A stretch of DNA of 64,000 nt from Macrostomum lignano (GCA_002269645.1 NIVC01000037.1:1-64000); one strand, 5' to 3'. Positions 1 to 22,600 are shown, counted from the stretch's first letter. Numbers and translations: made by a program. Notes: generated by a model from the letters alone, not told the origin.

Positions 1-365
1 GCTTCGTTCGGACGATACCGGTGCTCGAGAGAGGGCCGGCAGTCCATCTTTTTAGCGCTGGCGCGATTTGCAGCCATATGGCGTGATTATTTGGGTGCAC
101 TCACACTAAACTAAACTAGACAACTAACTAATGAGTCAGGAGGCACACAAAGTGCGCTCGCTGAGAGGGGTGGGGCGACTGCAAGATAAGACTAGGGGTG
201 GGGTAGAGATAAAAACAAATGTACAGTGGAATGGAAGGCTAACTAAAGTACTTTTAAGAGCTAAGCTAGGCTAGTCTAAACTATTCAACTTCTAATAAGC
301 CTTTCTAGGAAAGGCCTGCAAAAACTAGAGAATTCTCTTAAGAGTATCCCTCCACGGAAATCTTT
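1..365 (-). mobile_element. 5' end of a third tandem unit (U5 3' half, leader, start of ORF1), continuing off the left edge
   Basis: Position 1 matches 6456 and 10945. It includes the MAANRASAKK start codon region and the leader. Confidence 0.9.
297..365 (-). ncRNA. U5: U5 snRNA 3' half only (69 nt), abutting the retrotransposon 3' end
   Basis: Matches 11248-11316 apart from a few substitutions. The loop 1/5' half is replaced by the element tail (plus strand tcttt|gttgttaaaac). Confidence 0.9.
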
Positions 366-964
366 GTTGTTAAAACGAGGTGCCGTCGAAACCGGCGCGG
401 GTCAGTTCCGAAGAACTCTGCCGCAGTTATATTTTGTATTTGATCGAAAGAATTAAAAATATTTACAAGATTTCGATTTGAATATTTAATACGAATATTG
501 AAATTAAAAATATACATATATAAAACTATTTTTCAATATTTTGCAGTATTTTGCACGCATTTGGGGATAAAAAAGAGGGGAGGGAAATCCCGCACAAAGA
601 AGGGATCTAATAAAAACAGGACATCTAAAAAATACGTGCTTGATATTTGAAGGCCTATTGAGAGTAAAAGCAAGACATTTAAGTAAAAAAAAGAGATTAA
701 AAATGCAATAGCGCATATTTGAATTTAGTTGTAAAAATAGAATGAATATAGTAAAGGTGTAAAAAAGCAATTAGTAATATTTGTAGAGCAGTTGGGTAAA
801 AAACACAGTTGGGTAAATTGTAAAAAGAAACGCGAGGAGACATAGAGATTACCTAATCAGTCCTAATGACTGATCAACCGATCTCTGTCTCAGGCAGCAA
901 GTTTAGTTTTATTAGTTGCGTTTCAGAGCGTGGTCACTTCCGGTTTGGAAGGCTGGTAGCCAGC

Positions 965-3743
965 CTAACCCTGGGGTGGGAATCCCCTGTTTCTTTCCCG
1001 ACGCCTCATGGCATCCCAGAGGACATTGAGGACAGGGGTTCGGCCCGGAGCCCGAGGGGCTTCCGGCTCAATGTGGAAGCTGTGGAGCTTGGCTGCCCTC
1101 ATCTTGAGCAGCCAAGCCACCCCCAGCTGCTTGACCCTGTCTGCGAGCATCGGCATACCTGCCAGCTTGTGCAGGTATTCAATGCTGATGTAGGATGGCA
1201 CACCATAGCAGATACGGAGAGCCAGGTTTTGAATTTTCTGCAATTTGATTTGGTTAGTCGCACAGATTTGGCTCAGGATTGGCGCTCCGTAGGTGAGAGC
1301 GCTTTCTCCGTATGCCCTGTACAGCATTCTGAGGGTGGTGCTACTCAGCTTTGTCATTTTTGCAATTCTGCACAGTGACATTACAATGGCTCTGCTGGTA
1401 TCTGCCATGTTGTCCACATGTTTGTTCAGGCAGAGGCTCTGGTCAAGGAGGACACCCAGGAATTTCACCTCCTGACAGTACGGAACCTCAGTGTCCCCCA
1501 GATACAGTTTGGGTCGCAAGTCCATGCGCCTAGTGGGTTTGTAGTTGAAAGCGATTGCTTTGCTTTTACCGGCATTCAGTCTAATGCCTTGTTTACCGCA
1601 CCAGTCAAAGACTCGTCTGAGGTAGCTTTGAAGGGATGTTCGGAGCCCCGCAAAGGTGTCTGCTGAGGCCCAGACGGCCATGTCGTCTGCGAATTGACTG
1701 CGTTTGACGCTTGAGATGGTGGGAGTCGGCATTGAGCTGACGAAGAGGAGGTACAGGAGAGGGCTCAGAATGCCTCCCTGAGGGACGCCAGCCTGGATGG
1801 TGTGGGGATCGCTTAGGGCCCCCTCGATTCGAACCTGGATCTGTCTGTCTCGCAGGTAGTCAGACAGGATTCGCATGAGCATAGGTGGAAAACCATCGTG
1901 AGCATGCTATGCCTGATCTTGTCGTGCCAGGTGGAGTCAAAAGCTGCCTCTGCATCCAGGAAGACTGCAGCGGACTTTTTAGCTTTGCACTTTGCTACCA
2001 TGACATCTTGTGCCAGACGGCACAGGTTGTCATACGTGGAGTGAATTTTGCGGTAGGCGCATTGGTCATCTCCTAGGGTCTTATTATCCTCAAGGTGCTT
2101 GGTGAGTCTTTTTGCTATAAGCTTCTCAAACACTTTGCCCAGACATGAGGTCAGGCTGATTGGTCTGTAGGAGTTGGGGTGTTCGGGCGGTTTGTCCGGC
2201 TTGGGGATCATTGTCACCACAGCTTTCTTCCAGGCGCTGGGGAAAATCCCTCGACCGTAGCAGGCGTTGAAGAGGTTAGTGAGTCTCGTGATTGCCACCC
2301 CCTCTAAGCCCAGCTTGAGGACGCAGTTGGGAATCTTGTCCAGCCCGGGTGCTCCATCAGGCCTGAGGTGCTCCAGTTCCCACACTGTGTCTGCCACAGA
2401 GAATGCAGCATCAAGTGGGTGGGTCTCGATGGGTTCGATTCCCTCAGGAACGGGGTAGAATGAGGTGAGCTGTGCCACATCGGCCACCTCACGTTTGAGC
2501 TGTTCGCATGTGGAAGGGACTGGGCGCATCTTTGAGTCCAGAGTCTCGGCTAGAAGGTTAGCCTTCTCCAGATCTGTGTGCGCAGTTGTTTGACCCAGGG
2601 TGAGGCTGGGGATGGAGGTTGGCTTAAATTTGCCCATCAGCTTTTTAGTGTCATGCCAGAAATTCTTCACTTTCTTGTTCTTGCTGTTTTCAACAATACT
2701 CTCACAGACTTTGGTGAGCTTTCCATTCTGGAAGGAGTTAATTTCTCTCTTTATGCGATTTGCGAGCTGGTTTGCTTGGGTTTTGAAATTTTGATCCCGT
2801 GTGCTGAAGAAGAGGCGTCTGAGTCGTCTGCGCTCTTTGATCAGGTCGAGGATGTACTTGGGTAGGGCGTTTTTGGCACCACAGTCTGGTACTGTGGAGT
2901 CAATCACGGTGTGAATGGCCTTTGTGATGTGATCCACTTCGGCATTGATTTGGTCAGCATTTGATAATTTAATATTCTGATCTGAGCTCAAAGCTTCACT
3001 GATTTTGAGTCTGAACTCGTCCCAGTTTGTTTTTGAGAAGTTTTTGGGTCTGGGGGACCAGCCCATTTCTTCGACTGAATATTGAGCGTGAGGATTATAG
3101 GTAAGTGGTCACTGCCCAGGTCAGGACCCACCTCAAAGTCCTGCACAAATGGGAGAAAGTCCTCAGTGGCCAGGGCGAGGTCCAAGACATTCCTAGAAAT
3201 CAGCCCGTTTTTGGTGGCCAGTCTGGTGAACTGACCGGCTTGATTGAGAATGGTGGGCGAGGTGGGGCCCTCAGACAGCCAGTCGTGCAGCTGGTAGCCA
3301 GCCATGTTGTTGCTGCTGTCACCCCCGAGGAAGCGGTGTCTGGCATTGAGGTCACCCATGAGCACACTGCGCCTACGAGAGAGAAGATTTTTGAGTAGGT
3401 TCAGGTTCAGATGGTACGGTGCTGGAGACCTGTACACCAGAGCGAGATTGAAGTCAGGACCAGAGTTGTCAGACAAGCTCACGGTGCAAGAGATGGCTTC
3501 ATGGTTGACATTGTCATACTGCAAGCGCACATTTGTGAGTTTGACGCGAGGAGAGTGGGCAAGGAGAAGCCCGCGTTTGACTTGCGGGGTATCATACCGA
3601 ATGATGGAGTACCCGGGAATCTGGACAGTGTGACAACTTTTGAGAATGGTCTCAGAAAAGAGGGCAATGTCTAGCTCCTGACTGACGACCCACTGTGTCA
3701 GCTCTCTGATTTTCGGGTTGAATCCCCTGCAGTTTAAATGCAT
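965..3743 (-). CDS. Retrotransposon ORF2: APE endonuclease + reverse transcriptase, no RNase H seen (frameshifts at ~3050 and ~1898)
   Basis: Endonuclease motifs HLNCRG, SET, GDLNA, DLAL and SDHLPI. RT motifs KPDK..YRPISLTS, FLDAEAAFD, QGGILSPLLY, FADD and KFLGV. The Jockey-like C-terminus is QKIQNLALRICYGVPSY...LH. The ~1898 break is in frame in unit 2. Confidence 0.92.
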
Positions 3744-3829
3744 AATCTTCAGGGCTGTGGTTTGATTGTTTGAGTCTACAGTTAACGCACTGAAGTTTCA
3801 ATTCAAGTCTTGAGTTTAGCTGCCTGAGA

Positions 3830-6532
3830 CTAGGACTCAGTGGTCATGCCAGCCATGCCCGGCACTTCCTGGAGTGCAGCCCGCACAATGTCCTCAACCA
3901 TTTTACTGGTTGATTCCACAGTGAGGACCTCCCCAGGCGGTCGGGACAGGGCCTGCACAACCACTTGAGTCAGAGAGCGGGTGATCAGGGGCAACAGCAT
4001 GCTCACCACCGACATAAAGTCACTAAGCTGCAGCTGCACCGCCTGGCCGGCATCAGCTGACGGAGCAGTCGCATTGACATCAGACTCGGTCTCTGCCGCC
4101 GGAGCGCTCCTGGCATCATCGGTCACGATGACAAGCGGCCGGATCGCGGCGGGTACCGGCACCGTGCGCCTGCCTCGGCGGATCAGCCAGCCGCTGTCGG
4201 AGTCGTCGTCGGCGGCGGCGTCGTCGGTCTCACTTGACACTGGGGCAGCAGCGGCCGCAGCTTCCGCAGCTCGCGCCGCGGCTTTGGCCTCAGCAGCCGC
4301 TCTGGTCGCCTTGTCGTGCTCCGCCTTGGCGACGGTGCAGGCTCGACTGGTGGTTCGGTGCGAGCCGCCGCAGTTGGCGCAGACCGCTGGGCCCTCGTGC
4401 TGGCACTCCTTCCAGGAATGCTGGCCGCCGCAAATCCGGCAGCGCTGCTGCCCCCGACACTGGGCAGCGCGGTGGCCGAACTCCTGGCAGCGCTGGCATT
4501 GCAGAGCGCGGACCGGCTCGTCTGTGCGGCTGTCCTCGCAGTTGAACTTCAAGAAGTCGGTGCAGATGCCATCGCGGAGGCACTTCTCGTAGGTCATCGC
4601 CGACTTTGTGAAGATGCGCACGAACTGGGTTGCCTTCCCAGTCGCTCTGGCTCGGATTCTGTGGACGCTGACAATGTCCAGCTTGAGCGTGTCGCGCAAC
4701 AGGGTCGCGAAGTCAGCCTCCGAGAATGCGAGGGGCACCTCAGTAGCGACGAAGGTGCGTACCGGCTGCTGCTGCACTCTGTCGGGCCCTGTTCTGTTGT
4801 CCAGCGGTCGGCTCGGGCTGGACGGCGCTTTACGGGATGCTCGAGCAGCTTCTCCTCGCGCAGCGCGCCGCCCAGGAAGACGTTGTAGTCCCGCTCCGAC
4901 GCTGGAACACGAGATAGGCCGGCTGATTCGCCATCGGCGCAGTGTTGACGGCTCTAGCTTCGCCGGCAAAGTTGGTCTGCAGCCAGGCAACGAACTGCAT
5001 CAGCTTGTTGGCCGCGTCCCGGTGCACCTCAAAAACGATCGGCGGGATGGCAGCCTGGGGCCTTCTGGGCGGCGCAGGGCGCGCCGCAACCTGCGCGTAG
5101 GGCCGCGCTGCCGCAGCCGCCTGCGCGCTTGTCGCCGAAGCCGCCGCCGCACCGGCCGGCCAGGAAGCCGCCGAAGCCGCCGCCGCACCGGACGCCGCGC
5201 CGCGACCTCCTCGCCTGCCTCGCTGGTGGCCGCCACGGCCGCGCCGACCCCGATCGCCTTCGCGGTCTCGCGTCGCCGTCGCCTGCCGCTCCTGGGGCCT
5301 GTCGTCGCCCCGGCCGCCCTGGTCGTCGTCGTGGCCGCCTTGGTCGTCGTCCCGACCGCCTTGGTCGTCGCCGAATGGGCCGCCGTTTAGCGGCTGGCTG
5401 TAGGTCGGGTCATCCGGCAGAGCTCGCTTGCGCCGCAGCTCCGGCTTGGTGACACGGAATGTTAGCGAGATGCGGACGCCATTCTGAGAGTGGGCGGCGG
5501 GCACCTGGTGCTGCAGGCGTTTCTGGCAGTTTCCTGCCATCAGAATCAGCGAGCCTGGCAGCGTTGGAAAGCGGTGCGTCACGTTGCCGTCCCGACGGCG
5601 CAGCATGAACAGCCGCTCAGCGCCGAAGGACACGGTCGCGATCGTCGGCCTGTCGCCGAGCTCATCCTCATCGTCCGAGTGCCAGGGAATCCGGTCTCCC
5701 GGCTCGGTGTAGAAGTTCACCAACACGGAGTTGAACTTCGGGACATCGAACTGGGTATCATGGTAAATGAAGTCACGAATGTCTTCAATTACCTGATGCC
5801 AGTTAGATTTTCCTTCAGCTCAACCCCGCTGTAGGTGTACGACGGGCCGATCCAGTAGACGCGGCGCTGCTCACTCGGACGATGCTGAAAGGCCAGAGGC
5901 AGCAGGTCGGTGATCAGGCGCTCGTAGACTTGGTCCGCGACCTCGCTCAGGAACTTGGGCGCATAGATGATGGTGCTGTCGCTGGCGTAGATCGTCTGCT
6001 GACAGTCAGTCAAGTCAGGCTCATCAGGGAAGATGATTTGACTGATGTCAGCGTCCAGTTGCTCGGCAGGGGGCTTTGGCAGCGTCGAGGCCTGGTCTGC
6101 AGCCGATTGCTGGCGCTCCTCAGACGTCGGCGCTGCCGCTGCCGCACTGAGCTCGCTGGACTCGGCAGTTGGTGGCTCGGTGGTTGCTGCGGCCTCGTTG
6201 GATGGCAGGGCGCTTGTCTGGCCTGGCTCGTCGCAGTCGAGAGACATGCGCTGCTCTGCCTCTGCGCCTGCAGCCTCCGGCAGCTGCTCATTCTCTCGCA
6301 GGATCTCCTCTGCGTTGCGCAAGAGCTCGCCGGCCGGTGGGCTGATCGAGTGGCGGCCTTCCAGACTGCGTCGAGCTCGCATCAGGCCTGCTGGCGGCGG
6401 GCTCGCAGTCGATGGCTCAGCTGTCGGCGTCAGTCCAAGAAGCTGGCGACCGTAGGCTTCGTTCGGACGATACCGGTGCTCGAGAGAGGGCCGGCAGTCC
6501 ATCTTTTTAGCGCTGGCGCGATTTGCAGCCAT
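3830..6532 (-). CDS. Retrotransposon ORF1: acidic N-terminus + AlkB 2OG-Fe(II) dioxygenase + RGG linker + gag-like region with three CCHC knuckles (broken by frameshifts in this assembly)
   Basis: Built from ORF pieces 5789-6532, 4830-5726 and 3830-4990. Knuckles are CQRCQEFGHRAAQC, CRICGGQHSWKEC and CANCGGSHRTTSRAC. The break at ~5810 lies in an A4 run, and adding one A gives ...ELKEKSNWHQVIEDIRDFIYHDTQFDVPKFNSVLVNFY. In unit 2 the N- and C-termini are fused in one ORF (10107-11021). Confidence 0.8.
5450..5972 (-). CDS. alkB: AlkB-family (ALKBH2/ALKBH3-like) dioxygenase domain within ORF1
   Basis: Motifs YTYSG, FNSVLVNFY, WHSDDE (HxD), IATVSFGAERLF, GSLILM, QHQV (second His) and RISLTFR (RxxxxxR) occur in the canonical order. 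Confidence 0.92.
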
Positions 6533-6750
6533 ATGGCGTGATTATTTGGGTACACTCAAACTAAACCTAAACTACAACTAACTAATGAGTCAGGAGGCAC
6601 ACAAAGTGCGCTCGCTGAGAGGGGTGGGGCGACTGCAAGATAAGACTAGGGGTGGGGTAGAGATAAAAACAAATGTACAGTGGAATGGAAGGCTAACTAA
6701 AGTACTTTCAAGAGCTAAGCTAGGCTAGTCTAAACTATTCAACTTCCAAT

Positions 6751-6819
6751 AAGCCTTTCTAGGAAAGGCCTGCAAAAACTAGAGAATTCTCCTAAGAGTA
6801 TCCCTCCACGGAAATCTTT
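6751..6819 (-). ncRNA. U5: U5 snRNA 3' half only (69 nt), abutting the retrotransposon 3' end
   Basis: Same 69-nt segment and same junction (tcttt|gttgttaaaac) as at 365/366. Confidence 0.9.
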
Positions 6820-7417
6820 GTTGTTAAAACGAGGTGCCGTCGAAACCGGCGCGGGTCAGTTCCGAAGAACTCTGCCGCAGTTATATTTTGTATTTGATCG
6901 AAAGAATTAAAAATATTTACAAGATTTCGATTTGAATATTTAATACGAATATTGAAATAAAATGTACATATATAAAACTATTTTTCAATATTTTGCAGTA
7001 TTTTGCACGCATTTGGGGATAAAAAAGAGGGGAGGGAAATCCCGCACAAAGAAGGGATCTAATAAAAACAGGACATCTAAAAAATACGTGCTAGATATTT
7101 GAAGGCCTATTGAGAATAAAAGCAAGACAAATTAAGTAAAAAAAAGAGATTAAAAATGCAATAGCGCATATTTGAATTTAGTTGTAAAAATAGAATGAAT
7201 ATAGTAAAGGTGTAAAAAAGCAATTAGTAATATTTGTAGAGCAGTTGGGTAAAAAACACAGTTGGGAAAATTGTAAAAAGAAACGCGAGGAGACATAGAG
7301 ATTACCTAATCAGTCCTAATGACTGATCAACCGATCTCTGTCTCAGGCAGCAAGTTTAGTTTTATTAGTTGCGTTTCAGAGCGTGGTCACTTCCGGTTTG
7401 GAAGGCTGGTAGCCAGC

Positions 7418-10020
7418 CTAACCCTGGGGTGGGAATCCCCTGTTTCTTTCCCGACGCCTCATGGCATCCCAGAGGACATTGAGGACAGGGGTTCGGCCCG
7501 GAGCCCGAGGGGCTTCCGGCTCAATGTGGAAGCTGTGGAGCTTGGCTGCCCTCATCTTGAGCAGCCAAGCCACCCCCAGCTGCTTGACCCTGTCTGCGAG
7601 CATCGGCATACCTGCCAGCTTGTGCAGGTATTCAATGCTGATGTAGGATGGCACACCATAGCAGATACGGAGAGCCAGGTTTTGAATTTTCTGCAATTTG
7701 ATTTGGTTAGTCGCACAGATTTGGCTCAGGATTGGCGCTCCGTAGGTGAGAGCGCTTTCTCCGTATGCCCTGTACAGCATTCTGAGGGTGGTGCTACTCA
7801 GCTTTGTCATTTTTGCAATTCTGCACAGTGACATTACAATGGCTCTGCTGGTATCTGCCATGTTGTCCACATGTTTGTTCAGGCAGAGGCTCTGGTCAAG
7901 GAGGACACCCAGGAATTTCACCTCCTGACAGTACGGAACCTCAGTGTCCCCCAGATACAGTTTGGGTCGCAAGTCCATGCGCCTAGTGGGTTTGTAGTTG
8001 AAAGCGATTGCTTTGCTTTTACCGGCATTCAGTCTAATGCCTTGTTTACCGCACCAGTCAAAGACTCGTCTGAGGTAGCTTTGAAGGGATGTTCGGAGCC
8101 CCGCAAAGGTGTCTGCTGAGGCCCAGACGGCCATGTCGTCTGCGAATTGACTGCGTTTGACGCTTGAGATGGTGGGAGTCGGCATTGAGCTGACGAAGAG
8201 GAGGTACAGGAGAGGGCTCAGAATGCCTCCCTGAGGGACGCCAGCCTGGATGGTGTGGGGATCGCTTAGGGCCCCCTCGATTCGAACCTGGATCTGTCTG
8301 TCTCGCAGGTAGTCAGACAGGATTCGCATGAGCATAGGTGGAAAACCATCGGTGAGCATGCTATGCCTGATCTTGTCGTGCCAGGTGGAGTCAAAAGCTG
8401 CCTCTGCATCCAGGAAGACTGCAGCGGACTTTTTAGCTTTGCACTTTGCTACCATGACATCTTGTGCCAGACGGCACAGGTTGTCATACGTGGAGTGAAT
8501 TTTGCGGTAGGCGCATTGGTCATCTCCTAGGGTCTTATTATCCTCAAGGTGCTTGGTGAGTCTTTTTGCTATAAGCTTCTCAAACACTTTGCCCAGACAT
8601 GAGGTCAGGCTGATTGGTCTGTAGGAGTTGGGGTGTTCGGGCGGTTTGTCCGGCTTGGGGATCATTGTCACCACAGCTTTCTTCCAGGCGCTGGGGAAAA
8701 TCCCTCGACCGTAGCAGGCGTTGAAGAGGTTAGTGAGTCTCGTGATTGCCACCCCTCTAAGCCCAGCTTGAGGACGCAGTTGGGAATCTTGTCCAGCCCG
8801 GGTGCTCCATCAGGCCTGAGGTGCTCCAGTTCCCACACTGTGTCTGCCACAGAGAATGCAGCATCAAGTGGGTGGGTCTCGATGGGTTCGATTCCCTCAG
8901 GAACGGGGTAGAATGAGGTGAGCTGTGCCACCTCGGCCACCTCACGTTTGAGCTGTTCGCATGTGGAAGGGACTGGGCGCATCTTTGAGTCCAGAGTCTC
9001 GGCTAGAAGGTTAGCCTTCTCCAGATCTGTGTGCGCAGTTGTTTGACCCAGGGTGAGGCTGGGGATGGAGGTTGGCTTAAATTTGCCCATCAGCTTTTTA
9101 GTGTCTAGTAGCTCTTTGATCAGGTCGAGGATGTACTTGGGTAGGGCGTTTTTGGCACCACAGTCTGGTACTGTGGAGTCAATCACGGTGTGAATGGCCT
9201 TTGTGATGTGATCCACTTCGGCATTGATTTGGTCAGCATTTGATAATTTAATATTCTGATCTGAGCTCAAAGCTTCACTGATTTTGAGTCTGAACTCGTC
9301 CCAGTTTGTTTTGAGAAGTTTTTGGGTCTGGGGGACCAGCCCATTTCTTCGACTGAATATTGAGCGTGAGGATTATAGGTAAGTGGTCACTGCCCAGGTC
9401 AGGACCCACCTCAAAGTCCTGCACAAATGGGAGAAAGTCCTCAGTGGCCAGGGCGAGGTCCAAGACATTCCTAGAAATCAGCCCGTTTTTGGTGGCCAGT
9501 CTGGTGAACTGACCGGCTTGATTGAGAATGGTGGGCGAGGTGGGGCCCTCAGACAGCCAGTCGTGCAGCTGGTAGCCAGCCATGTTGTTGCTGCTGTCAC
9601 CCCGAGGAAGCGGTGTCTGGCATTGAGGTCACCCATGAGCACACTGCGCCTACGAGAGAGAAGATTTTTGAGTAGGTTCAGGTTCAGATGGTACGGTGCT
9701 GGAGACCTGTACACCAGAGCGAGATTGAAGTCAGGACCAGAGTTGTCAGACAAGCTCACGGTGCAAGAGATGGCTTCATGGTTGACATTGTCATACTGCA
9801 AGCGCACATTTGTGAGTTTGACGCGAGGAGAGTGGGCAAGGAGAAGCCCGCGTTTGACTTGCGGGGTATCATACCGAATGATGGAGTACCCGGGAATCTG
9901 GACAGTGTGACAACTTTTGAGAATGGTCTCAGAAAAGAGGGCAATGTCTAGCTCCTGACTGACGACCCACTGTGTCAGCTCTCTGATTTTCGGGTTGAAT
10001 CCCCTGCAGTTTAAATGCAT
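7418..10020 (-). pseudogene. ORF2 of the deleted unit (APE + RT), with frameshifts and an in-frame deletion of about 58 codons
   Basis: ORF pieces 9478-10020, 9275-9583, 8668-9270 and 7418-8752 match unit 1. LIKE-LL-DTKK replaces LIKE(60 aa)DTKK. Confidence 0.85.
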
Positions 10021-10106
10021 AATCTTCAGGGCTGTGGTTTGATTGTTTGAGTCTACAGTTAACGCACTGAAGTTTCAATTCAAGTCTTGAGTTTAGCTGC
10101 CTGAGA

Positions 10107-11021
10107 CTAGGACTCAGTGGTCATGCCAGCCATGCCCGGCACTTCCTGGAGTGCAGCCCGCACAATGTCCTCAACCATTTTACTGGTTGATTCCACAGTG
10201 AGGACCTCCCCAGGCGGTCGGGACAGGGCCTGCACAACCACTTGAGTCAGAGAGCGGGTGATCAGGGGCAACAGCATGCTCACCACCGACATAAAGTCAC
10301 TAAGCTGCAGCTGCACGATGTAGGTGTACGACGGGCCGATCCAGTAGACACGGCGCTGCTCACTCGGACGATGCTGAAAGGCCAGAGGCAGCAGGTCGGT
10401 GATCAGGCGCTCGTAGACTTGGTCCGCGACCTCGCTCAGGAACTTGGGCGCATAGATGATGGTGCTGTCGCTAGCGTAGATCGTCTGCTGACAGTCAGTC
10501 AAGTCAGGCTCATCAGGGAAGATGATTTGACTGATGTCAGCGTCCAGTTGCTCGGCAGGGGGCTTTGGCAGCGTCGAGGCCTGGTCTGCAGCCGATTGCT
10601 GGCGCTCCTCAGACGTCGGCGCTGCCGCTGCCGCACTGAGCTCGCTGGACTCGGCAGTTGGTGGCTCGGTGGTTGCTGCGGCCTCGTTGGATGGCAGGGC
10701 GCTTGTCTGGCCTGGCTCGTCGCAGTCGAGAGACATGCGCTGCTCTGCCTCTGCGCCTGCAGCCTCCGGCAGCTGCTCATTCTCTCGCAGGATCTCCTCT
10801 GCGTTGCGCAAGAGCTCGCCGGCCGGTGGGCTGATCGAGTGGCGGCCTTCCAGACTGCGTCGAGCTCGCATCAGGCCTGCTGGCGGCGGGCTCGCAGTCG
10901 ATGGCTCAGCTGTCGGCGTCAGTCCAAGAAGCTGGCGACCGTAGGCTTCGTTCGGACGATACCGGTGCTCGAGAGAGGGCCGGCAGTCCATCTTTTTAGC
11001 GCTGGCGCGATTTGCAGCCAT
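10107..11021 (-). CDS. Deleted ORF1 of unit 2 (304 aa, in-frame fusion lacking the AlkB core and zinc knuckles)
   Basis: ...GPSYTY|I|VQLQLSDF... joins unit-1 position ~5830 to ~4038. Confidence 0.8.
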   Translation of the reverse strand: MAANRASAKKMDCRPSLEHRYRPNEAYGRQLLGLTPTAEPSTASPPPAGLMRARRSLEGRHSISPPAGELLRNAEEILRENEQLPEAAGAEAEQRMSLDCDEPGQTSALPSNEAAATTEPPTAESSELSAAAAAPTSEERQQSAADQASTLPKPPAEQLDADISQIIFPDEPDLTDCQQTIYASDSTIIYAPKFLSEVADQVYERLITDLLPLAFQHRPSEQRRVYWIGPSYTYIVQLQLSDFMSVVSMLLPLITRSLTQVVVQALSRPPGEVLTVESTSKMVEDIVRAALQEVPGMAGMTTES

Positions 11022-11247
11022 ATGGCGTGATTATTTGGGTACACTCAAACTAAACCTAAACTACAACTAACTAATGAGTCAGGAGGCACACAATTACACA
11101 AAGTGCGCTCGCTGAGAGGGGTGGGGCGACTGCAAGATAAGACTAGGGGTGGGGTAGAGATAAAAACAAATGTACAGTGGAATGGAAGGCTAACTAAAGT
11201 ACTTTCAAGAGCTAAGCTAGGCTAGTCTAAACTATTCAACTTCCAAT

Positions 11248-11363
11248 AAGCCTTTCTAGGAAAGGCCTGCAAAAACTAGAGAATTCTCCTTAGAGTATCC
11301 CTCCACGGAAATCTTTAGTAAAAGGCGAAAGATTTAATCGTGGAATGAAGAGAAACCAGAGTT
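11248..11363 (-). ncRNA. U5: U5 spliceosomal snRNA, complete gene (116 nt)
   Basis: The reverse complement reads AACUCUGGUUUCUCUUC...AAAUCUUUCGCCUUUUACUAAAGAUUUCCGUGGAGGGAUAC...AGUUUUUG-CAGGCCUUUCCUAGAAAGGCUU. It shows the metazoan U5 5' stem, invariant loop 1 (GCCUUUUAC), an Sm-like site (AGUUUUUG) and a 3' stem-loop. Confidence 0.95.
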
Positions 11364-11589
11364 GAAGTTAAACAAGAGTGGGTAGCTTTTCTTATGTAGA
11401 AAATTCTGTAACCGCTTTAATTAAACATTCGTTTTCATAAAGCATTCGTTCCTGGCATGCCAATCTCTCTACTGACATAAGTGGAACTATTTGCGCATGA
11501 AAGCTAGTTTTTGTCTAGGCCTACGCAAACTGTTTTTTTCTATGCTGTAGAGAGTGGGAAGGATAGGCAGTAAAATTTCGGTAATTTTT

Positions 11590-12459
11590 TTAAAACTTCA
11601 TAGTAAGTCTTTTCTGAAGTAGCCACTGGTTAGCGAGGGTGATGACCTCTTCTTTGGACTCGAAGCGGTGCCCACGGAGTGGCCGCTTGAGCTGACGGAA
11701 TAGATGAAAATCGGAGGGTGCCAGGTCTGGTGAATAGGCCGGATGTGGGAGGATTTCGAACCCCGCAGTGGTGGCAGCATTCACCGCAACCTGGGCAGTG
11801 TGAGCTGAGGCATTGTCGTGAAGCAGCAAGGGGGCCAGCACTCAGCTTCCCCCGCTTCTTCTGGACCACTGCCTGACGAAACCGGCCCAGCTGTTCGGAG
11901 GACCAGACACCTGTGACAGTGTGCCTAACAGACAGTGACAGTGAGCAGGATCCCCTGACAGTCCCAGAAGAAACAGCCCTGGAATCTCGCTCAGACACGG
12001 GGGTCCATAGTGGCAGATCCAGCACTCATCCCCAGTAATGATTCATCGCTCAAATCCATCCAGGTTCTCATTGTAGGGGTCAGGCAGTAGTCCCGACGAG
12101 AAAGCATTCGGGGCGCTACTGCCTCAACTTTTATGGCTCACCCTGCCACGCTTGAATTCGTTGTAAAGTCGCTCGATGGTGCGCAGAGAGGGACAAGTTG
12201 TGGGGTACAGACTTTATCTTCTCCTCAATTGCAAAATTTAATATGAGGGCTCGGTATTTCTGCTTGTGTGTGCATTTTGCGGAAAATTCAGGGGGTGCTT
12301 AAAGTTCGTGCAGAAAAGATACAGTTAAAAAGACATGAAAAGAAAACACTGCACCCTATAAATTCTATATAAAAGTACTTTAAAAAGCCGAAAAAAATTA
12401 TGAAAAAAAGCTTTTGAAATGGCTGAACGGCAAAACTATAGATTTGAAGCACCCTCGTA
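11590..12459 (-). mobile_element. Degenerate mariner (Tc1/mariner) transposon remnant
   Basis: Fragments PSLRTIERLYNEFKRGR, IITGDECWI, FWDCQGILL, HDNASAHT and HPAYSPDLAPSDFHLF. One terminus reads TA-CGAGGGTGCTTCAAA (minus strand from 12459). There are stops and deletions, and the second TIR was not found. Confidence 0.85.
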
Positions 12460-19682: not shown

Positions 19683-22600
19683 CTATAGATAAACCAAGGG
19701 GCAGCTGGGGACTCTCACAGCTTCATCATCCTCGCCGCCGCCAAGCAAAGCCTGCTTATCGCTGGCCCTCATCTTGCCGCCGCCATTAGTCGGGCGCCGC
19801 TCTGTGGCACCAGTGGCGTTGTAGAATCCGCCGCTGCCGCCGCCGCCTTGCAGGATGTCGTCGGCGGCTTGATATTCGACATCCTCGCCGTCAGCTTCGT
19901 CGCCCCGACGGCCGGCCGCGGACACGATCGAATAGTGGAAGGCGAGTCGGCGACGTCGACGCTCCCGGTGCCGGGCGAGCACCACCAGGCTGAGCACGAT
20001 GGCGAGCAGGATTGCCACGGTGATGGCCAGGGGAACCATCAGGCCAACTGTGCGTCGGGTTTTATCCAGTTCGGCCTGCTGCCGCTGCTGCTCGATGCTC
20101 TGGATGAGGAGGCGGCCGTCTCGGGCCCTGGGATCCTCGGTTGGCTGCGGACAGCTGGCCTCGTGCAGCACCTCCTGGTTGGGGGTGAGATTGGGGACAG
20201 TCAGTCAGTCAGTCAGTCAGTCAGTCAGTCAGTCAGTCAGTCAGTCAGTCAGTCAGTCAGTCAGTCAGTCAGTCAGTCAGTCAGTCAGTCAGTCAGTCAG
20301 TCAGTCAGTCAGTCAGTCAGTCAGTCAGTCAGTCAGTCAGTCAGTCAGTCAGTCAGTCAGTCAGTCAGTCAGTCAGTCAGTCAGTCAGTCAGTCAGTCAG
20401 TCAGTCAGTCAGTCAGTCAGTCAGTCAGTCAGTCAGTCAGTCAGTCAGTCAGTCAGTCAGTCAGTCAGTCAGTCAGTCAGTCAGTCAGTCAGTCAGTCAG
20501 TCAGTCAGTCAGTCAGTCAGTCAGTCAGTCAGTCAGTCAGTCAGTCAGTCAGTCAGTCAGTCAGTCAGTCAGTCAGTCAGTCAGTCAGTCAGTCAGTCAG
20601 TCAGTCAGTCAGTCAGTCAGTCAGTCAGTCAGTCAGTCAGTCAGTCAGTCAGTCAGTCAGTCAGTCAGTCAGTCAGTCAGTCAGTCAGTCAGTCAGTCAG
20701 TCAGTCAGTCAGTCAGTCAGTCAGTCAGTCAGTCAGTCAGTCAGTCAGTCAGTCAGTGCAGAATAGGCCTCAGCAAAATGGCCTCGCTCACCTGATGCGT
20801 TACATTTGGCTGAAATCCGCCCTGGCAACGGTTGCGAGGCAGTTTCCTATACCCCTCGGTAATAATCTTCTTAACCGTGTTGGCGTCGCAGATTCTAGGC
20901 GTTGGCACGTCGGGGTCGCGCACGCAGTCCAGGCTGTTGACCGGCCGGGTGTAGCCAAATTCGCATTCGAAATCGTCTTTAGTGCACTCGCACGGCGTCA
21001 CGCTGGTCTGCGGCTTGTAACTGTAGGTGCTGGCGCACATGCTGTCCGCCTTCAGCCGCTTGATTGTCTCCTTGGCACCCAACACACAGGCCTGGTGGTT
21101 GGCGTTGTCGTAGTTCACCGCCCCGTTGCTCAGCCAGGACTCGTAGTCGCTGTCTGTGCAGCTTCTGCTCAGAAGCACGCCAAGGTCGACTACGAACACC
21201 TGCGGCGGATGGGAGGGCACAATGGGGAGTTAGAGGTAGAGAATGGAGCTTCAGATGGAGAGAATGGAGATTCAGATAGAGAGAATGGAGATTCAGATGG
21301 AAAGAATGGAGATTCAGATGGAGATAATAGAGATTCAGATGGAGAGAATGGAAATTCAGATAAAGAGAATGGAGATTCAGATGGAGAGAATGGAGATTCA
21401 GATGGAGAGAATGGAGATTCAGATGGAGATAATAGAGATTCAGATGGAGAGAATGGAGATTCAGATGGAGAGAATGGAGATTCAGATGGAAATAATAGAG
21501 ATTCAGATGGAGAGAATGGAGATTCAGATGGAGATAATAGAGATTCAGATGGAGATAATAGAGATTCAGATGGAGAGAATGGAGATTCAGATAAAGAGAA
21601 TGGAGATTCAGATGGAGAGAATGGAGATTCAGATGGAGATAATAGAGATTCAGATGGAGAGAATGGAGATTCAGATAAAGAGAATGGAGATTCAGATGGA
21701 GAGAATGGAGATTCAGATGGAGAGAATGGAGATTCAGATGGAGAAAATGGAGATTCAGATGGAAAGAATGGAGATTCATAGGAGAGATTGGTGATTAAAA
21801 TGGAGAGATTAAAGATTCAGAGAGAATGGAGATTCATAGGAGAGATTGGTGATTAAAATGGAGAGATTAAAGATTCAGAGAGAATGGAGATTCATAGGAG
21901 AGATTGGTGATTAAAATGGAGAGATTAAAGATTCAGAGAGAATGGAGATTCATAGGAGAGATTGGTGATTAAAATGGAGAGATTAAAGATTCAGAGAGAA
22001 TGGAGATTCATAGGAGAGATTGGTGATTAAAATGGAGAGATTAAAGATTCAGAGAGAATGGAGATTCATGGAGAGATTGGTGATTAAAATGGAGAGATTA
22101 AAGATTCAGAGAGAATGGAGATTCATAGGAGAGATTGGTGATTAAAATGGAGAGATTAAAGATTCAGAGAGAATGGAGATTCAGATGGAAAGAATGGAGA
22201 TTCATAGGAGAGATTGGTGATTAAAATGGAGAGATTAAAGATTCAGAGAGAATGGAGATTCATAGGAGAGATTGGTGATTAAAATGGAGAGATTAAAGAT
22301 TCAGAGAGAATGGAGATTCATAGGAGAGATTGGTGATTAAAATGGAGAGATTAAAGATTCAGAGAGAATGGAGATTCAGATGGAAAGAATGGAGATTCAT
22401 AGGAGAGATTGGTGATTAAAATGGAGAGATTAAAGATTCAGAGAGAATGGAGATTCATAGGAGAGATTGGTGATTAAAATGGAGAGATTAAAGATTCAGA
22501 GAGAATGGAGATTCAGATGGAAAGAATGGAGATTCATAGGAGAGATTGGTGATTAAAATGGAGAGATTAAAGATTCAGAGAGAATGGAGATTCGGGAGAG

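What the first reader, a model, noticed from the sequence alone, without database searches (positions are those of the whole stretch)
6751..11363. Self-regenerating target: each unit starts with the U5 3' half, rebuilding an intact U5 gene and a fresh landing site
Seen: the order in element sense is U5 5' half (11363-11317), then [69-nt U5 3' half + ~225-nt leader + ORF1 + ORF2 + tail] repeated head-to-tail. The same U5 3' half occurs at 11248-11316, 6751-6819 and 297-365, so the array begins with a full 116-nt U5 including the Sm site and 3' stem-loop. The three leaders differ (CTCTTAAGAG / CTCCTAAGAG / CTCCTTAGAG, and an 8-nt CAATTACA insert only at ~11091), so they are not identical collapsed copies. 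Inference: the element either carries the U5 3' half at its 5' end or makes an unusually long TSD. Either way, insertion would leave an essential spliceosomal RNA gene intact and recreate the target, so new copies stack next to U5 and could use the U5 promoter.
Basis: partly seen in the sequence, partly recalled or inferred. Interest (0 to 1): 0.92.

Follow-up and report, generated by a model that had tools for sequence, protein, structure and literature searches.

The report
U5-gene-rebuilding LINE array in a flatworm
A jumping gene (LINE) of the flatworm Macrostomum lignano lands at one exact position inside U5 spliceosomal RNA genes and carries a spare copy of the part of U5 it cuts off, so a full-length insertion rebuilds a complete U5 gene that can be hit again, and copies pile up head-to-tail.

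Summary
Rfam finds one full U5 snRNA at 11249-11364 (minus strand, 83.5 bits). Its 3' 68 nt recur at 6752-6819 and 298-365, each at the start of a head-to-tail unit of an endonuclease/reverse-transcriptase LINE.

The ORF1 protein identified the host as Macrostomum lignano. That gave three loci in the public assembly, all with the same layout:
- 13 junctions lie at the same U5 position (nt 48/49).
- Flanks of two paralogous loci are only about 80-86% identical, while the elements differ by less than 1%.
- Tail lengths vary, and distal units carry the most private changes.

Two results separate "carried half" from "long duplication":
- A 5'-truncated copy has only a 14-bp duplication (U5 nt 49-62) and breaks the U5 gene.
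- One array ends in a different U5 3'-half variant, which pairs perfectly with the resident 5' half.

So the element carries U5 nt 49-116 plus 27 nt of 3' flank. Full-length insertion rebuilds U5, and one rebuilt U5 was hit again. Use of the U5 promoter is inferred, not shown.

A U5-targeting Tx1 family is listed in the literature. I found no description of the target-rebuilding design. ORF1 also contains an AlkB dioxygenase domain.

The parts
11419..11444 (-). Candidate proximal sequence element (PSE) of the U5 gene, about -56 to -81
   Evidence: The block TGCTTTAYGAAAACGAAKGTTTMATT is conserved between paralogous U5 loci whose other upstream sequence does not align. Promoter function is inferred.
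11391..11402 (-). TATA-like block (TTTCTAnATAA), about -28 to -39
   Evidence: Conserved across the four locus copies. Function is inferred.
11249..11364 (-). Complete chimeric U5 snRNA gene: resident 5' part plus element-borne 3' part
   Evidence: Rfam RF00020, 83.5 bits, model 1-117. Two of the 15 pairs of stem I are non-standard.
11317..11364 (-). Resident U5 nt 1-48, up to the insertion point in conserved loop 1 (...CGCCTTTTACT|AAAG)
11303..11316 (-). U5 nt 49-62 (AAAGATTTCCGTGG), the 14 bp duplicated around the 5'-truncated copy at another locus
   Evidence: NIVC01002030.1: U5 nt 1-62, then 8 extra nt, then the truncated element, then AAA and U5 nt 49 onward.
6820..11316 (-). Unit 1, nearest the promoter: internally deleted element (lacks 1788 bp of ORF1 including AlkB and the CCHC knuckles, and 174 bp of ORF2)
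   Evidence: The same deletions are present in NIVC01003829.1.
11222..11316 (-). 5' head of unit 1: carried U5 nt 49-116 (11249-11316) plus 27 nt of U5 3' flank (11222-11248, likely 3' box)
   Evidence: Identity to the native flank at the far end of the NIVC01002892.1 array stops exactly after these 95 nt.
366..6819 (-). Unit 2: full-length element (6454 bp), with five 1-nt deletions that shift the reading frames
   Evidence: It is 99.3-99.7% identical over its full length to units in the public assembly.
6725..6819 (-). 5' head of unit 2: carried U5 nt 49-116 (6752-6819) plus the 27-nt flank (6725-6751)
3830..6532 (-). ORF1 of unit 2 (about 900 aa when the frames are joined): N-terminal region, AlkB domain, Gly/Arg/Asp-rich linker, CCHC zinc knuckles
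   Evidence: It reads as one continuous frame in other copies and in the annotated proteins P0132 and P0133.
5454..6001 (-). AlkB-type 2OG-Fe(II) dioxygenase domain inside ORF1, with HxD, H and Rx5R residues present
   Evidence: Pfam PF13532, E = 1.1e-16. Residues located. Homologues.
4403..4498 (-). CCHC zinc knuckles of ORF1
965..3743 (-). ORF2 of unit 2: AP-type endonuclease (2988-3743) and reverse transcriptase, with two frameshifts
   Evidence: Pfam Exo_endo_phos_2, Exo_endo_phos and RVT_1. An intact 944-codon frame exists in a public copy.
7418..8752 (-). Uninterrupted reverse-transcriptase ORF (444 aa) of unit 1
   Evidence: Pfam RVT_1, E = 4e-37.
366..418 (-). 3' end of unit 2: UUCG-capped hairpin (404-418) and tail CACCTCGTTTTAACAAC (366-382), with no poly(A). 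The same features are at 6820-6872 for unit 1.
1..365 (-). Head of unit 3 (U5 nt 49-116 at 298-365, 27-nt flank at 271-297, leader, start of ORF1), cut by the window edge

Best explanation
This is an array of a site-specific non-LTR retrotransposon (a LINE with an AP-type endonuclease and a reverse transcriptase) of Macrostomum lignano.

**Shown by the sequences**
- The element inserts at one position of U5 snRNA genes, between nt 48 and 49, at the 3' edge of the invariant loop 1.
- A full-length copy begins with U5 nt 49-116 plus 27 nt of U5 3' flank. This segment travels with the element. It is not copied from the local target.
- The real target-site duplication is about 14 bp (U5 nt 49-62).
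- A full-length insertion therefore leaves, upstream of itself, a complete chimeric U5 gene: resident promoter and 5' part, element-borne 3' part and 3' flank.
- That rebuilt U5 is again a target. New copies enter at the promoter-proximal end and push older ones away, giving head-to-tail arrays.
- A 5'-truncated insertion lacks the head and kills the U5 at that locus.

**Inferred**
- The template RNA is a transcript that starts at the U5 promoter and reads through the U5 3' end into the element. It may end at the next U5 3' part, which would explain the lack of poly(A).
- Reverse transcription is primed at the bottom-strand nick (...CTTT-3').
- The U5-complementary end of the cDNA anneals to the target's U5 sequence. 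The top-strand end at nt 62 then primes second-strand synthesis and gives a seamless 5' junction.

This resembles the co-transcription and homology-assisted 5' joining proposed for R2.
For: **Site specificity**
- 13 element/U5 3' junctions in the window and in three public loci all lie at the same nucleotide.
- NIVC01002892.1 and the window locus have upstream flanks only about 80-86% identical and rearranged. Their elements are 99.3-99.7% identical.

**Independent insertion events**
- Tails vary: AACAAC, AACAACAAC, AACAACAAA, TTTTTAAC.
- Leader and U5 sub-variants are shared across loci rather than within arrays.
- Window unit 2 is closer to a unit at a paralogous locus (8 substitutions) than to its positional counterpart (44 substitutions).

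**Carried head, not a long duplication**
- The truncated copy in NIVC01002030.1 follows U5 nt 1-62, with a 14-bp duplication. Rfam sees only a partial U5 there, model positions 14-63.
- The NIVC01003829.1 array ends in a different U5 3' variant, which pairs 15/15 with the resident 5' half. The carried variant pairs 13/15. All units at all loci carry the same variant.
- At the far end of the NIVC01002892.1 array, identity to the element head stops after U5 plus 27 nt.

**Re-use of the rebuilt target.** The truncated copy sits in the U5 rebuilt by the full-length unit downstream of it.

**Stacking from the promoter side.** Private substitutions per unit along NIVC01002892.1 are 2, 0, 0 and 36, with the 36 in the distal unit. 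In NIVC01003829.1 they are 7, then 18 in the distal unit.

**Coding capacity**
- Pfam finds the endonuclease and RT domains.
- One public copy has an intact 944-codon ORF2.
- The window copy is interrupted only by 1-nt deletions.

**Promoter.** Conserved PSE-like and TATA-like blocks lie upstream of the head U5 genes.

**Precedent.** Co-transcription with the target, and its help in target-specific integration, is described for R2 (PMC4494074, discussion citing Eickbush and Fujimoto).
Against: - Only one 5'-truncated copy was available, so the 14-bp duplication rests on a single event.
- The distal variant in NIVC01003829.1 is itself followed by a tail-like relic and a further degenerate U5 3' half. 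It may have been brought by an older element rather than being the original gene half. It still contradicts a local-duplication origin of the present heads.
- The far end of the NIVC01002892.1 array, taken alone, would also fit a 95-bp duplication.
- No RNA data exist. The carried 27 nt probably contain the U5 3' box, which should terminate most U5-promoter transcripts, so read-through may be rare. An internal promoter is not excluded.
- Two adjacent units differ by only 4 substitutions. Unequal crossing-over or gene conversion may add to or homogenise the arrays.
- Array copy number differs between the window and the public assembly. This could be a haplotype difference or an assembly error.
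- All loci were found through the element's own protein, so the share of U5 genes that are occupied is unknown.
Confidence: 0.72

Rival explanations
1. Long target-site duplication. The endonuclease cuts the two strands 68-95 bp apart, so each insertion duplicates the local U5 3' half and flank. The element itself starts after that.
For: The structure within the window fits this equally well. At the far end of the NIVC01002892.1 array the shared sequence is exactly U5 nt 49-116 plus 27 nt. Very long duplications are reported for another site-specific element, R9 (title of reference 22 in PMC5035012).
Against: - The 5'-truncated copy has only a 14-bp duplication and lacks U5 nt 63-116 upstream.
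- The NIVC01003829.1 array ends in a different U5 3' variant from the one at the head of every unit.
- The same head variant occurs at all loci.
Confidence: 0.06
2. One insertion per locus, followed by DNA-level amplification. Unequal crossing-over between the two U5 3' halves builds the array, and retrotransposition plays no part in stacking.
For: Direct repeats of at least 68 bp flank each unit. Two neighbouring units differ by only 4 substitutions. Copy number differs between the window and NIVC01003829.1.
Against: - It does not explain how the first U5 3' half came to lie upstream of the element.
- Tails differ between neighbouring units.
- A truncated copy with its own 14-bp duplication lies at the head of one array.
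- Neighbouring units belong to different sub-variants that are shared with other loci.
- Private changes increase towards the distal end.
Confidence: 0.12
3. Template switching at each insertion. The reverse transcriptase jumps from the 5' end of the element RNA onto U5 snRNA, as in U6/L1 chimeras, and adds U5 sequence anew each time.
For: snRNA-LINE chimeras made by template switching are known (PMC4494074 section 19; PMC6789731). This would also explain why the heads do not match the local gene.
Against: - Every unit has the same junction, to the nucleotide.
- Every unit includes 27 nt of genomic 3' flank that mature U5 snRNA lacks.
- Head sub-variants co-segregate with leader sub-variants.

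A single ancestral switch onto a 3'-extended U5 precursor remains a possible origin of the head.
Confidence: 0.05
4. Assembly artefact: a collapsed or mis-joined repeat.
For: The region is highly repetitive. Reading frames are interrupted only by 1-nt deletions, as expected from long-read consensus errors.
Against: The same architecture occurs in the window and in three contigs of a separate public assembly, with different flanks and different unit variants.
Confidence: 0.02

Closest known systems
Tx1-clade non-LTR retrotransposons that target snRNA genes (Keno in U2; a Tx1 family listed with target 'U5 snRNA' in Fig. 3 of PMC4494074)
   Same: AP-endonuclease LINEs that insert at a fixed site of a multicopy spliceosomal RNA gene. 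U5 is already recorded as a target.
   Different: - ORF1 here has CCHC knuckles plus AlkB, not the L1/Tx1-type ORF1 (a family feature from my own knowledge).
- ORF2 ends without a Cys/His motif.
- NCBI names given to its RT relatives are 'transposon BS' (Jockey-like), not TX1.
- I found no report that those families carry the target's 3' part or rebuild the gene.
Utopia (restriction-like endonuclease LINE in U2 snRNA genes; PMC4640811)
   Same: Targets an snRNA gene at a conserved site. One family is 'occasionally inserted in tandem in U2 genes'.
   Different: Different endonuclease type and a single ORF. Duplications are 0-20 bp. No carried gene half is described.
R1 (28S rDNA-specific AP-endonuclease LINE)
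   Same: Strict site specificity, no poly(A), and a defined 3' end abutting the target. The 14-bp duplication is the same length as that of R1 (R1 value from my own knowledge).
   Different: R1 disrupts its target and carries no target sequence that restores it.
R2 (28S rDNA; co-transcribed with its target)
   Same: No promoter of its own is needed. Target-derived sequence on the RNA can help the cDNA anneal to the target for 5' joining (PMC4494074 section 20, citing Eickbush 2000/2010 and Fujimoto 2004).
   Different: - R2 has a restriction-like endonuclease.
- It is released by an HDV-like ribozyme. None was detected here.
- The target sequence on R2 RNA lies upstream of the insertion site, so nothing is duplicated or rebuilt.
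Integrative elements and temperate phages that insert into tRNA or tmRNA genes and carry the gene's 3' end in attP (own knowledge)
   Same: Same logic: the incoming element supplies a replacement 3' part, so the target gene stays whole, and tandem insertions can follow.
   Different: Those are prokaryotic and use DNA recombinases. Here the element moves by reverse transcription, and the rebuilt gene is a chimera made at the 5' junction of a LINE.
Long-duplication site-specific LINEs (R9, title of ref. 22 in PMC5035012; SLACS in spliced-leader genes, 49 bp, own knowledge)
   Same: Target sequence is repeated on both sides of the element inside a small or ribosomal RNA gene.
   Different: In those elements the repeat is a true duplication of the local target. 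Here the local duplication is about 14 bp and the rest is carried.
Drosophila telomeric HeT-A/TART/TAHRE arrays (Jockey clade; own knowledge)
   Same: Head-to-tail LINE arrays in which the position of a copy determines which promoter it can use.
   Different: Those attach to chromosome ends, not to a gene-internal site, and do not rebuild a gene.

Membership tests
Non-LTR retrotransposon (LINE), AP-endonuclease type | ORF2 with an N-terminal AP-like endonuclease followed by a reverse transcriptase | tested here: met
   Pfam Exo_endo_phos_2 (E = 1.6e-12), Exo_endo_phos and RVT_1 (E = 4e-37) in that order. One public copy has a single 944-codon frame.
Non-LTR retrotransposon (LINE), AP-endonuclease type | No terminal repeats of its own; 5' truncation; short target-site duplication | tested here: met
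   Self-BLAST shows only head-to-tail unit identity. One copy is truncated to its last 574 bp and has a 14-bp duplication.
Site-specific (target-specific) LINE | Independent insertions at the same nucleotide of a repeated target sequence | tested here: met
   13 junctions lie at U5 nt 48/49 in arrays at three paralogous loci. Flanks are about 80-86% identical and elements over 99%. Ascertainment is through the element, so insertions outside U5 were not sampled.
Tx1 clade (includes the recorded U5-targeting family) | RT groups with Tx1 in a phylogeny with reference elements | not testable with these tools
   No reference LINE sequences were available. Indirect evidence: named relatives are called 'transposon BS', not TX1.
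Tx1 clade (includes the recorded U5-targeting family) | L1/Tx1-type ORF1 and a Cys/His motif at the ORF2 C-terminus (features from own knowledge) | tested here: not met
   ORF1 has CCHC knuckles. The about 160 aa after the RT contain no Cys/His motif (translations).
Jockey clade / Jockey-like group | ORF1 with CCHC knuckles; ORF2 is endonuclease plus RT without RNase H or a C-terminal knuckle | tested here: met
   No RNase H domain was found by Pfam.
Jockey clade / Jockey-like group | Poly(A) tail; RT groups with Jockey in a phylogeny | tested here: not met
   The tail is ...GTTTTAACAAC with no poly(A). The phylogeny could not be run. The clade assignment is left open.
R2-like co-transcribed elements | Self-cleaving HDV-like ribozyme at the 5' end | tested here: not met
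   No Rfam ribozyme hit at E <= 1 in window 1-11700.
R2-like co-transcribed elements | Transcription from the target gene's promoter | not testable with these tools
   No RNA data. Only conserved PSE-like and TATA-like blocks upstream of the head U5 genes.
U5 spliceosomal RNA gene (the rebuilt copy) | Full match to the U5 covariance model, including loop 1, Sm site and 3' hairpin | tested here: met
   83.5-83.8 bits over model 1-117 at three array heads. Two of the 15 stem I pairs are non-standard in the chimera.
U5 spliceosomal RNA gene (the rebuilt copy) | Expressed and assembled into snRNP | not testable with these tools
   Needs small-RNA sequencing that distinguishes the 3'-half variants.
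AlkB-family 2OG-Fe(II) dioxygenase (domain in ORF1) | Pfam 2OG-FeII_Oxy_2 match with HxD...H iron ligands and Rx5R | tested here: met
   PF13532, E = 1.1e-16 on the window ORF. HSD, H (RLQHQ) and RISLTFR are present. The domain is 35-45% identical to about 200-aa AlkB proteins.

The most novel reading that the evidence does not exclude
The element and the U5 genes of M. lignano may form a working partnership.
- The LINE has no promoter of its own. It is transcribed only as a read-through of the U5 gene it has just rebuilt.
- The chimeric U5 genes at array heads are expressed and functional.
- The U5 Sm site and hairpin on the element RNA may let it use the snRNP assembly and import route back into the nucleus.
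- The AlkB domain in ORF1 may remove methyl marks from the element's own RNA.

This would be a eukaryotic retrotransposon that repairs its essential target as prokaryotic tRNA-gene integrating elements do, and that can reshape the 3' halves of a spliceosomal RNA gene family.
Probability: 0.3. Interest if true: 0.88.

Novelty: new variant of a known kind. Interest (0 to 1): 0.78.

Why it matters
- **A different strategy for tolerated insertion.** Site-specific LINEs are usually thought to survive by hitting redundant gene copies and inactivating them. Here the full-length element replaces what it cuts off, so the target gene and its promoter stay whole and can be used again.
- **Stacking explained.** This accounts for head-to-tail stacking without invoking recombination.
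- **Effect on the U5 gene family.** A mobile element can overwrite the 3' half and 3' flank of U5 genes across loci.
- **Testable transcription model.** The idea that a LINE is transcribed from an snRNA-type Pol II promoter can now be tested in a laboratory flatworm that has transgenesis.
- **Design principle.** The layout may be of interest for targeted, non-disruptive gene insertion.
- **AlkB in ORF1.** It is also present in at least one related element from another organism. It links LINE biology to RNA or DNA demethylation.

Tried and rejected
- **Closest RT relatives outside M. lignano.** P0001 (64% identity, Logan contig L001) and P0002 (L002) have no U5 pieces in or beside the element. 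They say nothing about the mechanism.
- **Clade placement with solved structures.** The endonuclease matches TRAS1 and another LINE endonuclease only weakly. The RT matches L1 ORF2p and R2 about equally. This is not discriminating.
- **Third homologue search.** The C-terminal part of ORF1 returned only self.
- **Ribozyme scan.** Rfam found nothing in the leader or the whole array at E <= 1.
- **Distal U5 3' half alone.** Rfam did not recognise it, so pairing with the resident 5' half was counted by hand from the Rfam structure.
- **Literature searches.**
  - U5-specific retrotransposons: only the Fig. 3 legend in PMC4494074.
  - M. lignano with non-LTR and snRNA: nothing.
  - AlkB in non-LTR elements: nothing; only orchid Gypsy elements, PMC9289625.
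  - The Dada (PMC3706591) and Mutsu (PMC5340908) papers describe no carried target halves.
- **Early host guess.** I first guessed a shrimp from the satellite-rich window. The ORF1 hit to M. lignano proteins showed this was wrong.
- **AlkB-ORF1 relatives from other organisms.** L008-L011 have no U5 in their 5' regions.

Full report
**1. Observation**

Rfam finds one RNA gene in the window: a full-length U5 snRNA on the minus strand at 11249-11364 (83.5 bits, gathering score 40, E = 7.9e-13). A more permissive scan of 1-11700 finds nothing else.

The 3' 68 nt of this U5 (nt 49-116, numbered from the Rfam start) recur at 6819-6752 and 365-298, with E-values near 1e-30, and nowhere else.

Self-BLAST shows head-to-tail units on the minus strand:
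- Unit 1 is 11316->6820 (4497 bp).
- Unit 2 is 6819->366 (6454 bp).
- Unit 3 has only its first 365 nt inside the window.

Units 1 and 2 are about 99% identical. Unit 1 lacks 1788 bp and 174 bp and has an 8-nt duplication in its leader. Each unit ends ...CCTCGTTTTAACAAC, without poly(A), directly followed by AAAGATTTCCGTGG, which is U5 nt 49 onward. The three sequence variants it quoted lie inside the U5 3' part, not in the leader.

**2. What the unit encodes**

*ORF2.* Pfam finds an AP-type endonuclease (Exo_endo_phos_2, Exo_endo_phos) followed by a reverse transcriptase (RVT_1).

*ORF1.* It has CCHC zinc knuckles. Unexpectedly, it also has an AlkB-type 2OG-Fe(II) dioxygenase domain (PF13532, E = 1.1e-16). 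The HxD, H and Rx5R residues are present.

*State of the reading frames.* In window unit 2 the frames are interrupted only by five 1-nt deletions and by no nonsense substitution. The interruptions differ from copy to copy in the public assembly. One public copy has an intact 944-codon ORF2, and other copies cover ORF1 in one frame. The family is therefore young. Some of the frameshifts may be long-read consensus errors.

**3. Host and further loci**

The RT has no close relative in the protein collection. The best hit is 64% identical, and its contig shows no U5.

The ORF1/AlkB query matched annotated proteins of Macrostomum lignano at 99-100%. Through these proteins and their cluster members I fetched three loci of assembly GCA_002269645.1.

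Maps of the three loci:

- *NIVC01002892.1.* A full U5 (83.8 bits) is followed by four units. The last unit has a 140-bp deletion. After it comes a remnant made of U5 nt 49-116 plus 27 nt, and beyond that the sequence is unrelated.
- *NIVC01002030.1.* The order is:
  - U5 nt 1-62
  - 8 extra nt
  - a copy truncated to its last 574 bp
  - AAA
  - a full unit with the usual U5 head
  - the head of a further unit, running into an assembly gap

  Rfam sees only a partial U5 there, model positions 14-63.
- *NIVC01003829.1.* This is the counterpart of the window locus (99.1% over 12.1 kb). It has the same deleted first unit but only two units in all. The array ends in a U5 3' half of a different sequence variant.

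**4. Is the element site-specific, and are the units separate insertions?**

- All 13 element/U5 junctions lie at the same nucleotide.
- The window locus and NIVC01002892.1 are paralogous. Their flanks upstream of U5 are only about 80-86% identical and are rearranged. Their elements are 99.3-99.7% identical. The arrays were therefore not inherited with the loci.
- Tails differ: AACAAC, AACAACAAC, AACAACAAA, TTTTTAAC.
- Leader and U5 sub-variants are shared between loci rather than within arrays.
- Window unit 2 differs by 8 substitutions from a unit at the paralogous locus, but by 44 from its positional counterpart.
- Private substitutions rise with distance from the U5 promoter. The counts are 2, 0, 0 and 36 along NIVC01002892.1, and 7 and 18 in NIVC01003829.1. 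This is the order expected if new copies enter at the promoter-proximal end.
- Two adjacent units differ by only 4 substitutions. Some unequal crossing-over or gene conversion is not excluded.

**5. Carried half or long duplication?**

Two observations decide this.

*The truncated copy.* It is preceded by U5 nt 1-62, not by a whole U5. It is flanked by a 14-bp duplication, AAAGATTTCCGTGG, which is nt 49-62. The staggered cut is therefore about 14 bp, and a copy without the element's 5' end does not rebuild U5.

*The far end of the NIVC01003829.1 array.* The U5 3' half there reads AAAGATTTCCGTGGAGAGGAACATTCAATGAGTG...CCCCTTCCAAGAAGGGGTAC. It is identical to the element-borne half only for the first 16 nt. 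Placed on the Rfam U5 structure, it pairs with the resident 5' half at all 15 positions of stem I. The element-borne half has two non-standard pairs. A local duplication would have copied this variant. Instead, every unit at every locus carries the other one.

*The far end of the NIVC01002892.1 array.* Identity to the element head stops exactly 27 nt past the U5 3' end. This defines the carried segment as U5 nt 49-116 plus 27 nt. These 27 nt share a GAAGT..AA.AGT pattern with the flank of the other variant and probably contain the 3' box (inference).

**6. Consequences shown by the sequences**

- A full-length insertion leaves a complete chimeric U5 upstream of itself. It scores 83.5-83.8 bits at three array heads.
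- The truncated copy in NIVC01002030.1 lies in the U5 that the unit downstream of it had rebuilt. The rebuilt gene is therefore a competent target.
- That truncated insertion ended the cycle at its locus, because no intact U5 remains there.

**7. Inferred mechanism**

snRNA genes have no internal promoter (PMC4494074, introduction). Upstream of the array-head U5 genes, a 26-nt block at about -56 to -81 and a TATA-like block at about -30 are conserved between paralogues whose other flank does not align.

The simplest reading has these steps:
- The template RNA is a read-through transcript from the U5 promoter.
- The endonuclease nicks the bottom strand after ...CTTT.
- Reverse transcription starts at the AAC/A-rich tail, possibly helped by downstream U5 sequence on the RNA.
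- The U5-complementary end of the cDNA anneals to the target.
- The top-strand end at nt 62 primes second-strand synthesis.

Co-transcription with the target, and its help in specific integration, is described for R2 (PMC4494074, section 20).

Points against or still open:
- The carried 3' box should end most U5 transcripts.
- No ribozyme was found.
- No RNA data were available.

I put about 0.45 on U5-promoter use. I put about 0.85 on the carried head.

**8. Comparison with known systems**

- U5 is already listed as a target of a Tx1-clade family (Fig. 3 legend, PMC4494074). U2 is targeted by Keno and by Utopia, and one Utopia family occurs in tandem in U2 genes (PMC4640811).
- The present element does not look like Tx1. 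Its ORF1 has CCHC knuckles. Its ORF2 has no C-terminal Cys/His motif. Its named RT relatives are called 'transposon BS'. A proper phylogeny could not be run, so the clade is left open.
- The 14-bp duplication and the lack of poly(A) recall R1.
- Very long duplications are known for R9 (title cited in PMC5035012). That is not what happens here.
- The closest functional analogue is prokaryotic: integrating elements that carry the 3' end of the tRNA gene they enter (own knowledge).
- I found no description of a LINE that carries the downstream part of its target gene and rebuilds it, nor of AlkB in a LINE ORF1. Repbase itself could not be searched.

**9. Side finding followed in part**

An exhaustive HMMER search with the ORF1 N-terminal/AlkB protein found long proteins (700-960 aa) with an N-terminal AlkB domain. 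One of them also has a CCHC knuckle. On one Logan contig, such an ORF is directly followed by an AP-endonuclease ORF. AlkB-bearing LINEs therefore exist in at least one other organism. Their 5' regions contain no U5.

**10. Verdict**

This is a new variant of a known kind, the site-specific LINE. It has a target-rebuilding design of real interest to transposon and snRNA biologists. Its transcription mode is still untested.

Noticed in passing
window 5454-6001 (-), within ORF1 3830-6532; also L003, L005, L006, L011: ORF1 of the element contains an AlkB-type 2OG-Fe(II) dioxygenase domain with its catalytic residues intact, fused in one frame to the CCHC knuckle region. Long AlkB-plus-CCHC proteins exist elsewhere, and one AlkB ORF1 is directly followed by an AP-endonuclease ORF in another organism. 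I found no literature on AlkB in non-LTR elements; only orchid Gypsy elements are reported.
   Followed up: partly
L006 12117-12300 (NIVC01003829.1, just beyond the window's left end in the counterpart locus): After the distal, different-variant U5 3' half come a 3'-flank-like stretch, about 30 nt resembling the element tail (CCTCATTTTAACAAT), and a degenerate second U5 3' half. This may be a relic of an older insertion cycle or a minimal non-autonomous derivative (U5 head joined to tail).
   Followed up: partly
window 1-365 versus L006 12115 onward: The window array has at least three units where the public assembly's counterpart has two. Their second units differ by 44 substitutions. This is a haplotype, homeologue or assembly difference in array content.
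   Followed up: partly
window 11130-11141, 6633-6644, 179-190 (-): The leader contains a strong 3' splice-acceptor-like motif (CTTATCTTGCAG). M. lignano uses spliced-leader trans-splicing (own knowledge), so a read-through precursor might be trans-spliced here to give a capped mRNA. Untested.
   Followed up: no
window 404-418 and 6858-6872 (-): A GAGUUC-UUCG-GAACU hairpin lies about 40 nt from the element's 3' end. It is a candidate recognition signal for the reverse transcriptase.
   Followed up: no
window about 11600-12300 (-): A mariner-like transposase pseudogene (…HDNASAHT…PYSPDLAPSDFHLF…) ends about 240 bp upstream of the U5 gene.
   Followed up: no
window 35817-37861 (-): Two adjacent ORFs match protein-primed type B DNA polymerase (PF03175). 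They are probably a fragment of a Maverick/Polinton-like or similar element.
   Followed up: partly
window 19683-26221 (-): Exons of a sortilin/VPS10-domain gene (PF15902, PF15901) are separated by introns filled with large satellite arrays (periods 4, 21/58 and 25 nt). The whole window is unusually rich in micro- and minisatellites.
   Followed up: partly
window 1899, 3057, 4812, 4906, 5804: All five interruptions of the reading frames of unit 2 are single-base deletions, mostly in short C runs, and there are no nonsense substitutions. Other copies are interrupted at other places. This suggests consensus errors of long-read assembly as much as decay.
   Followed up: partly
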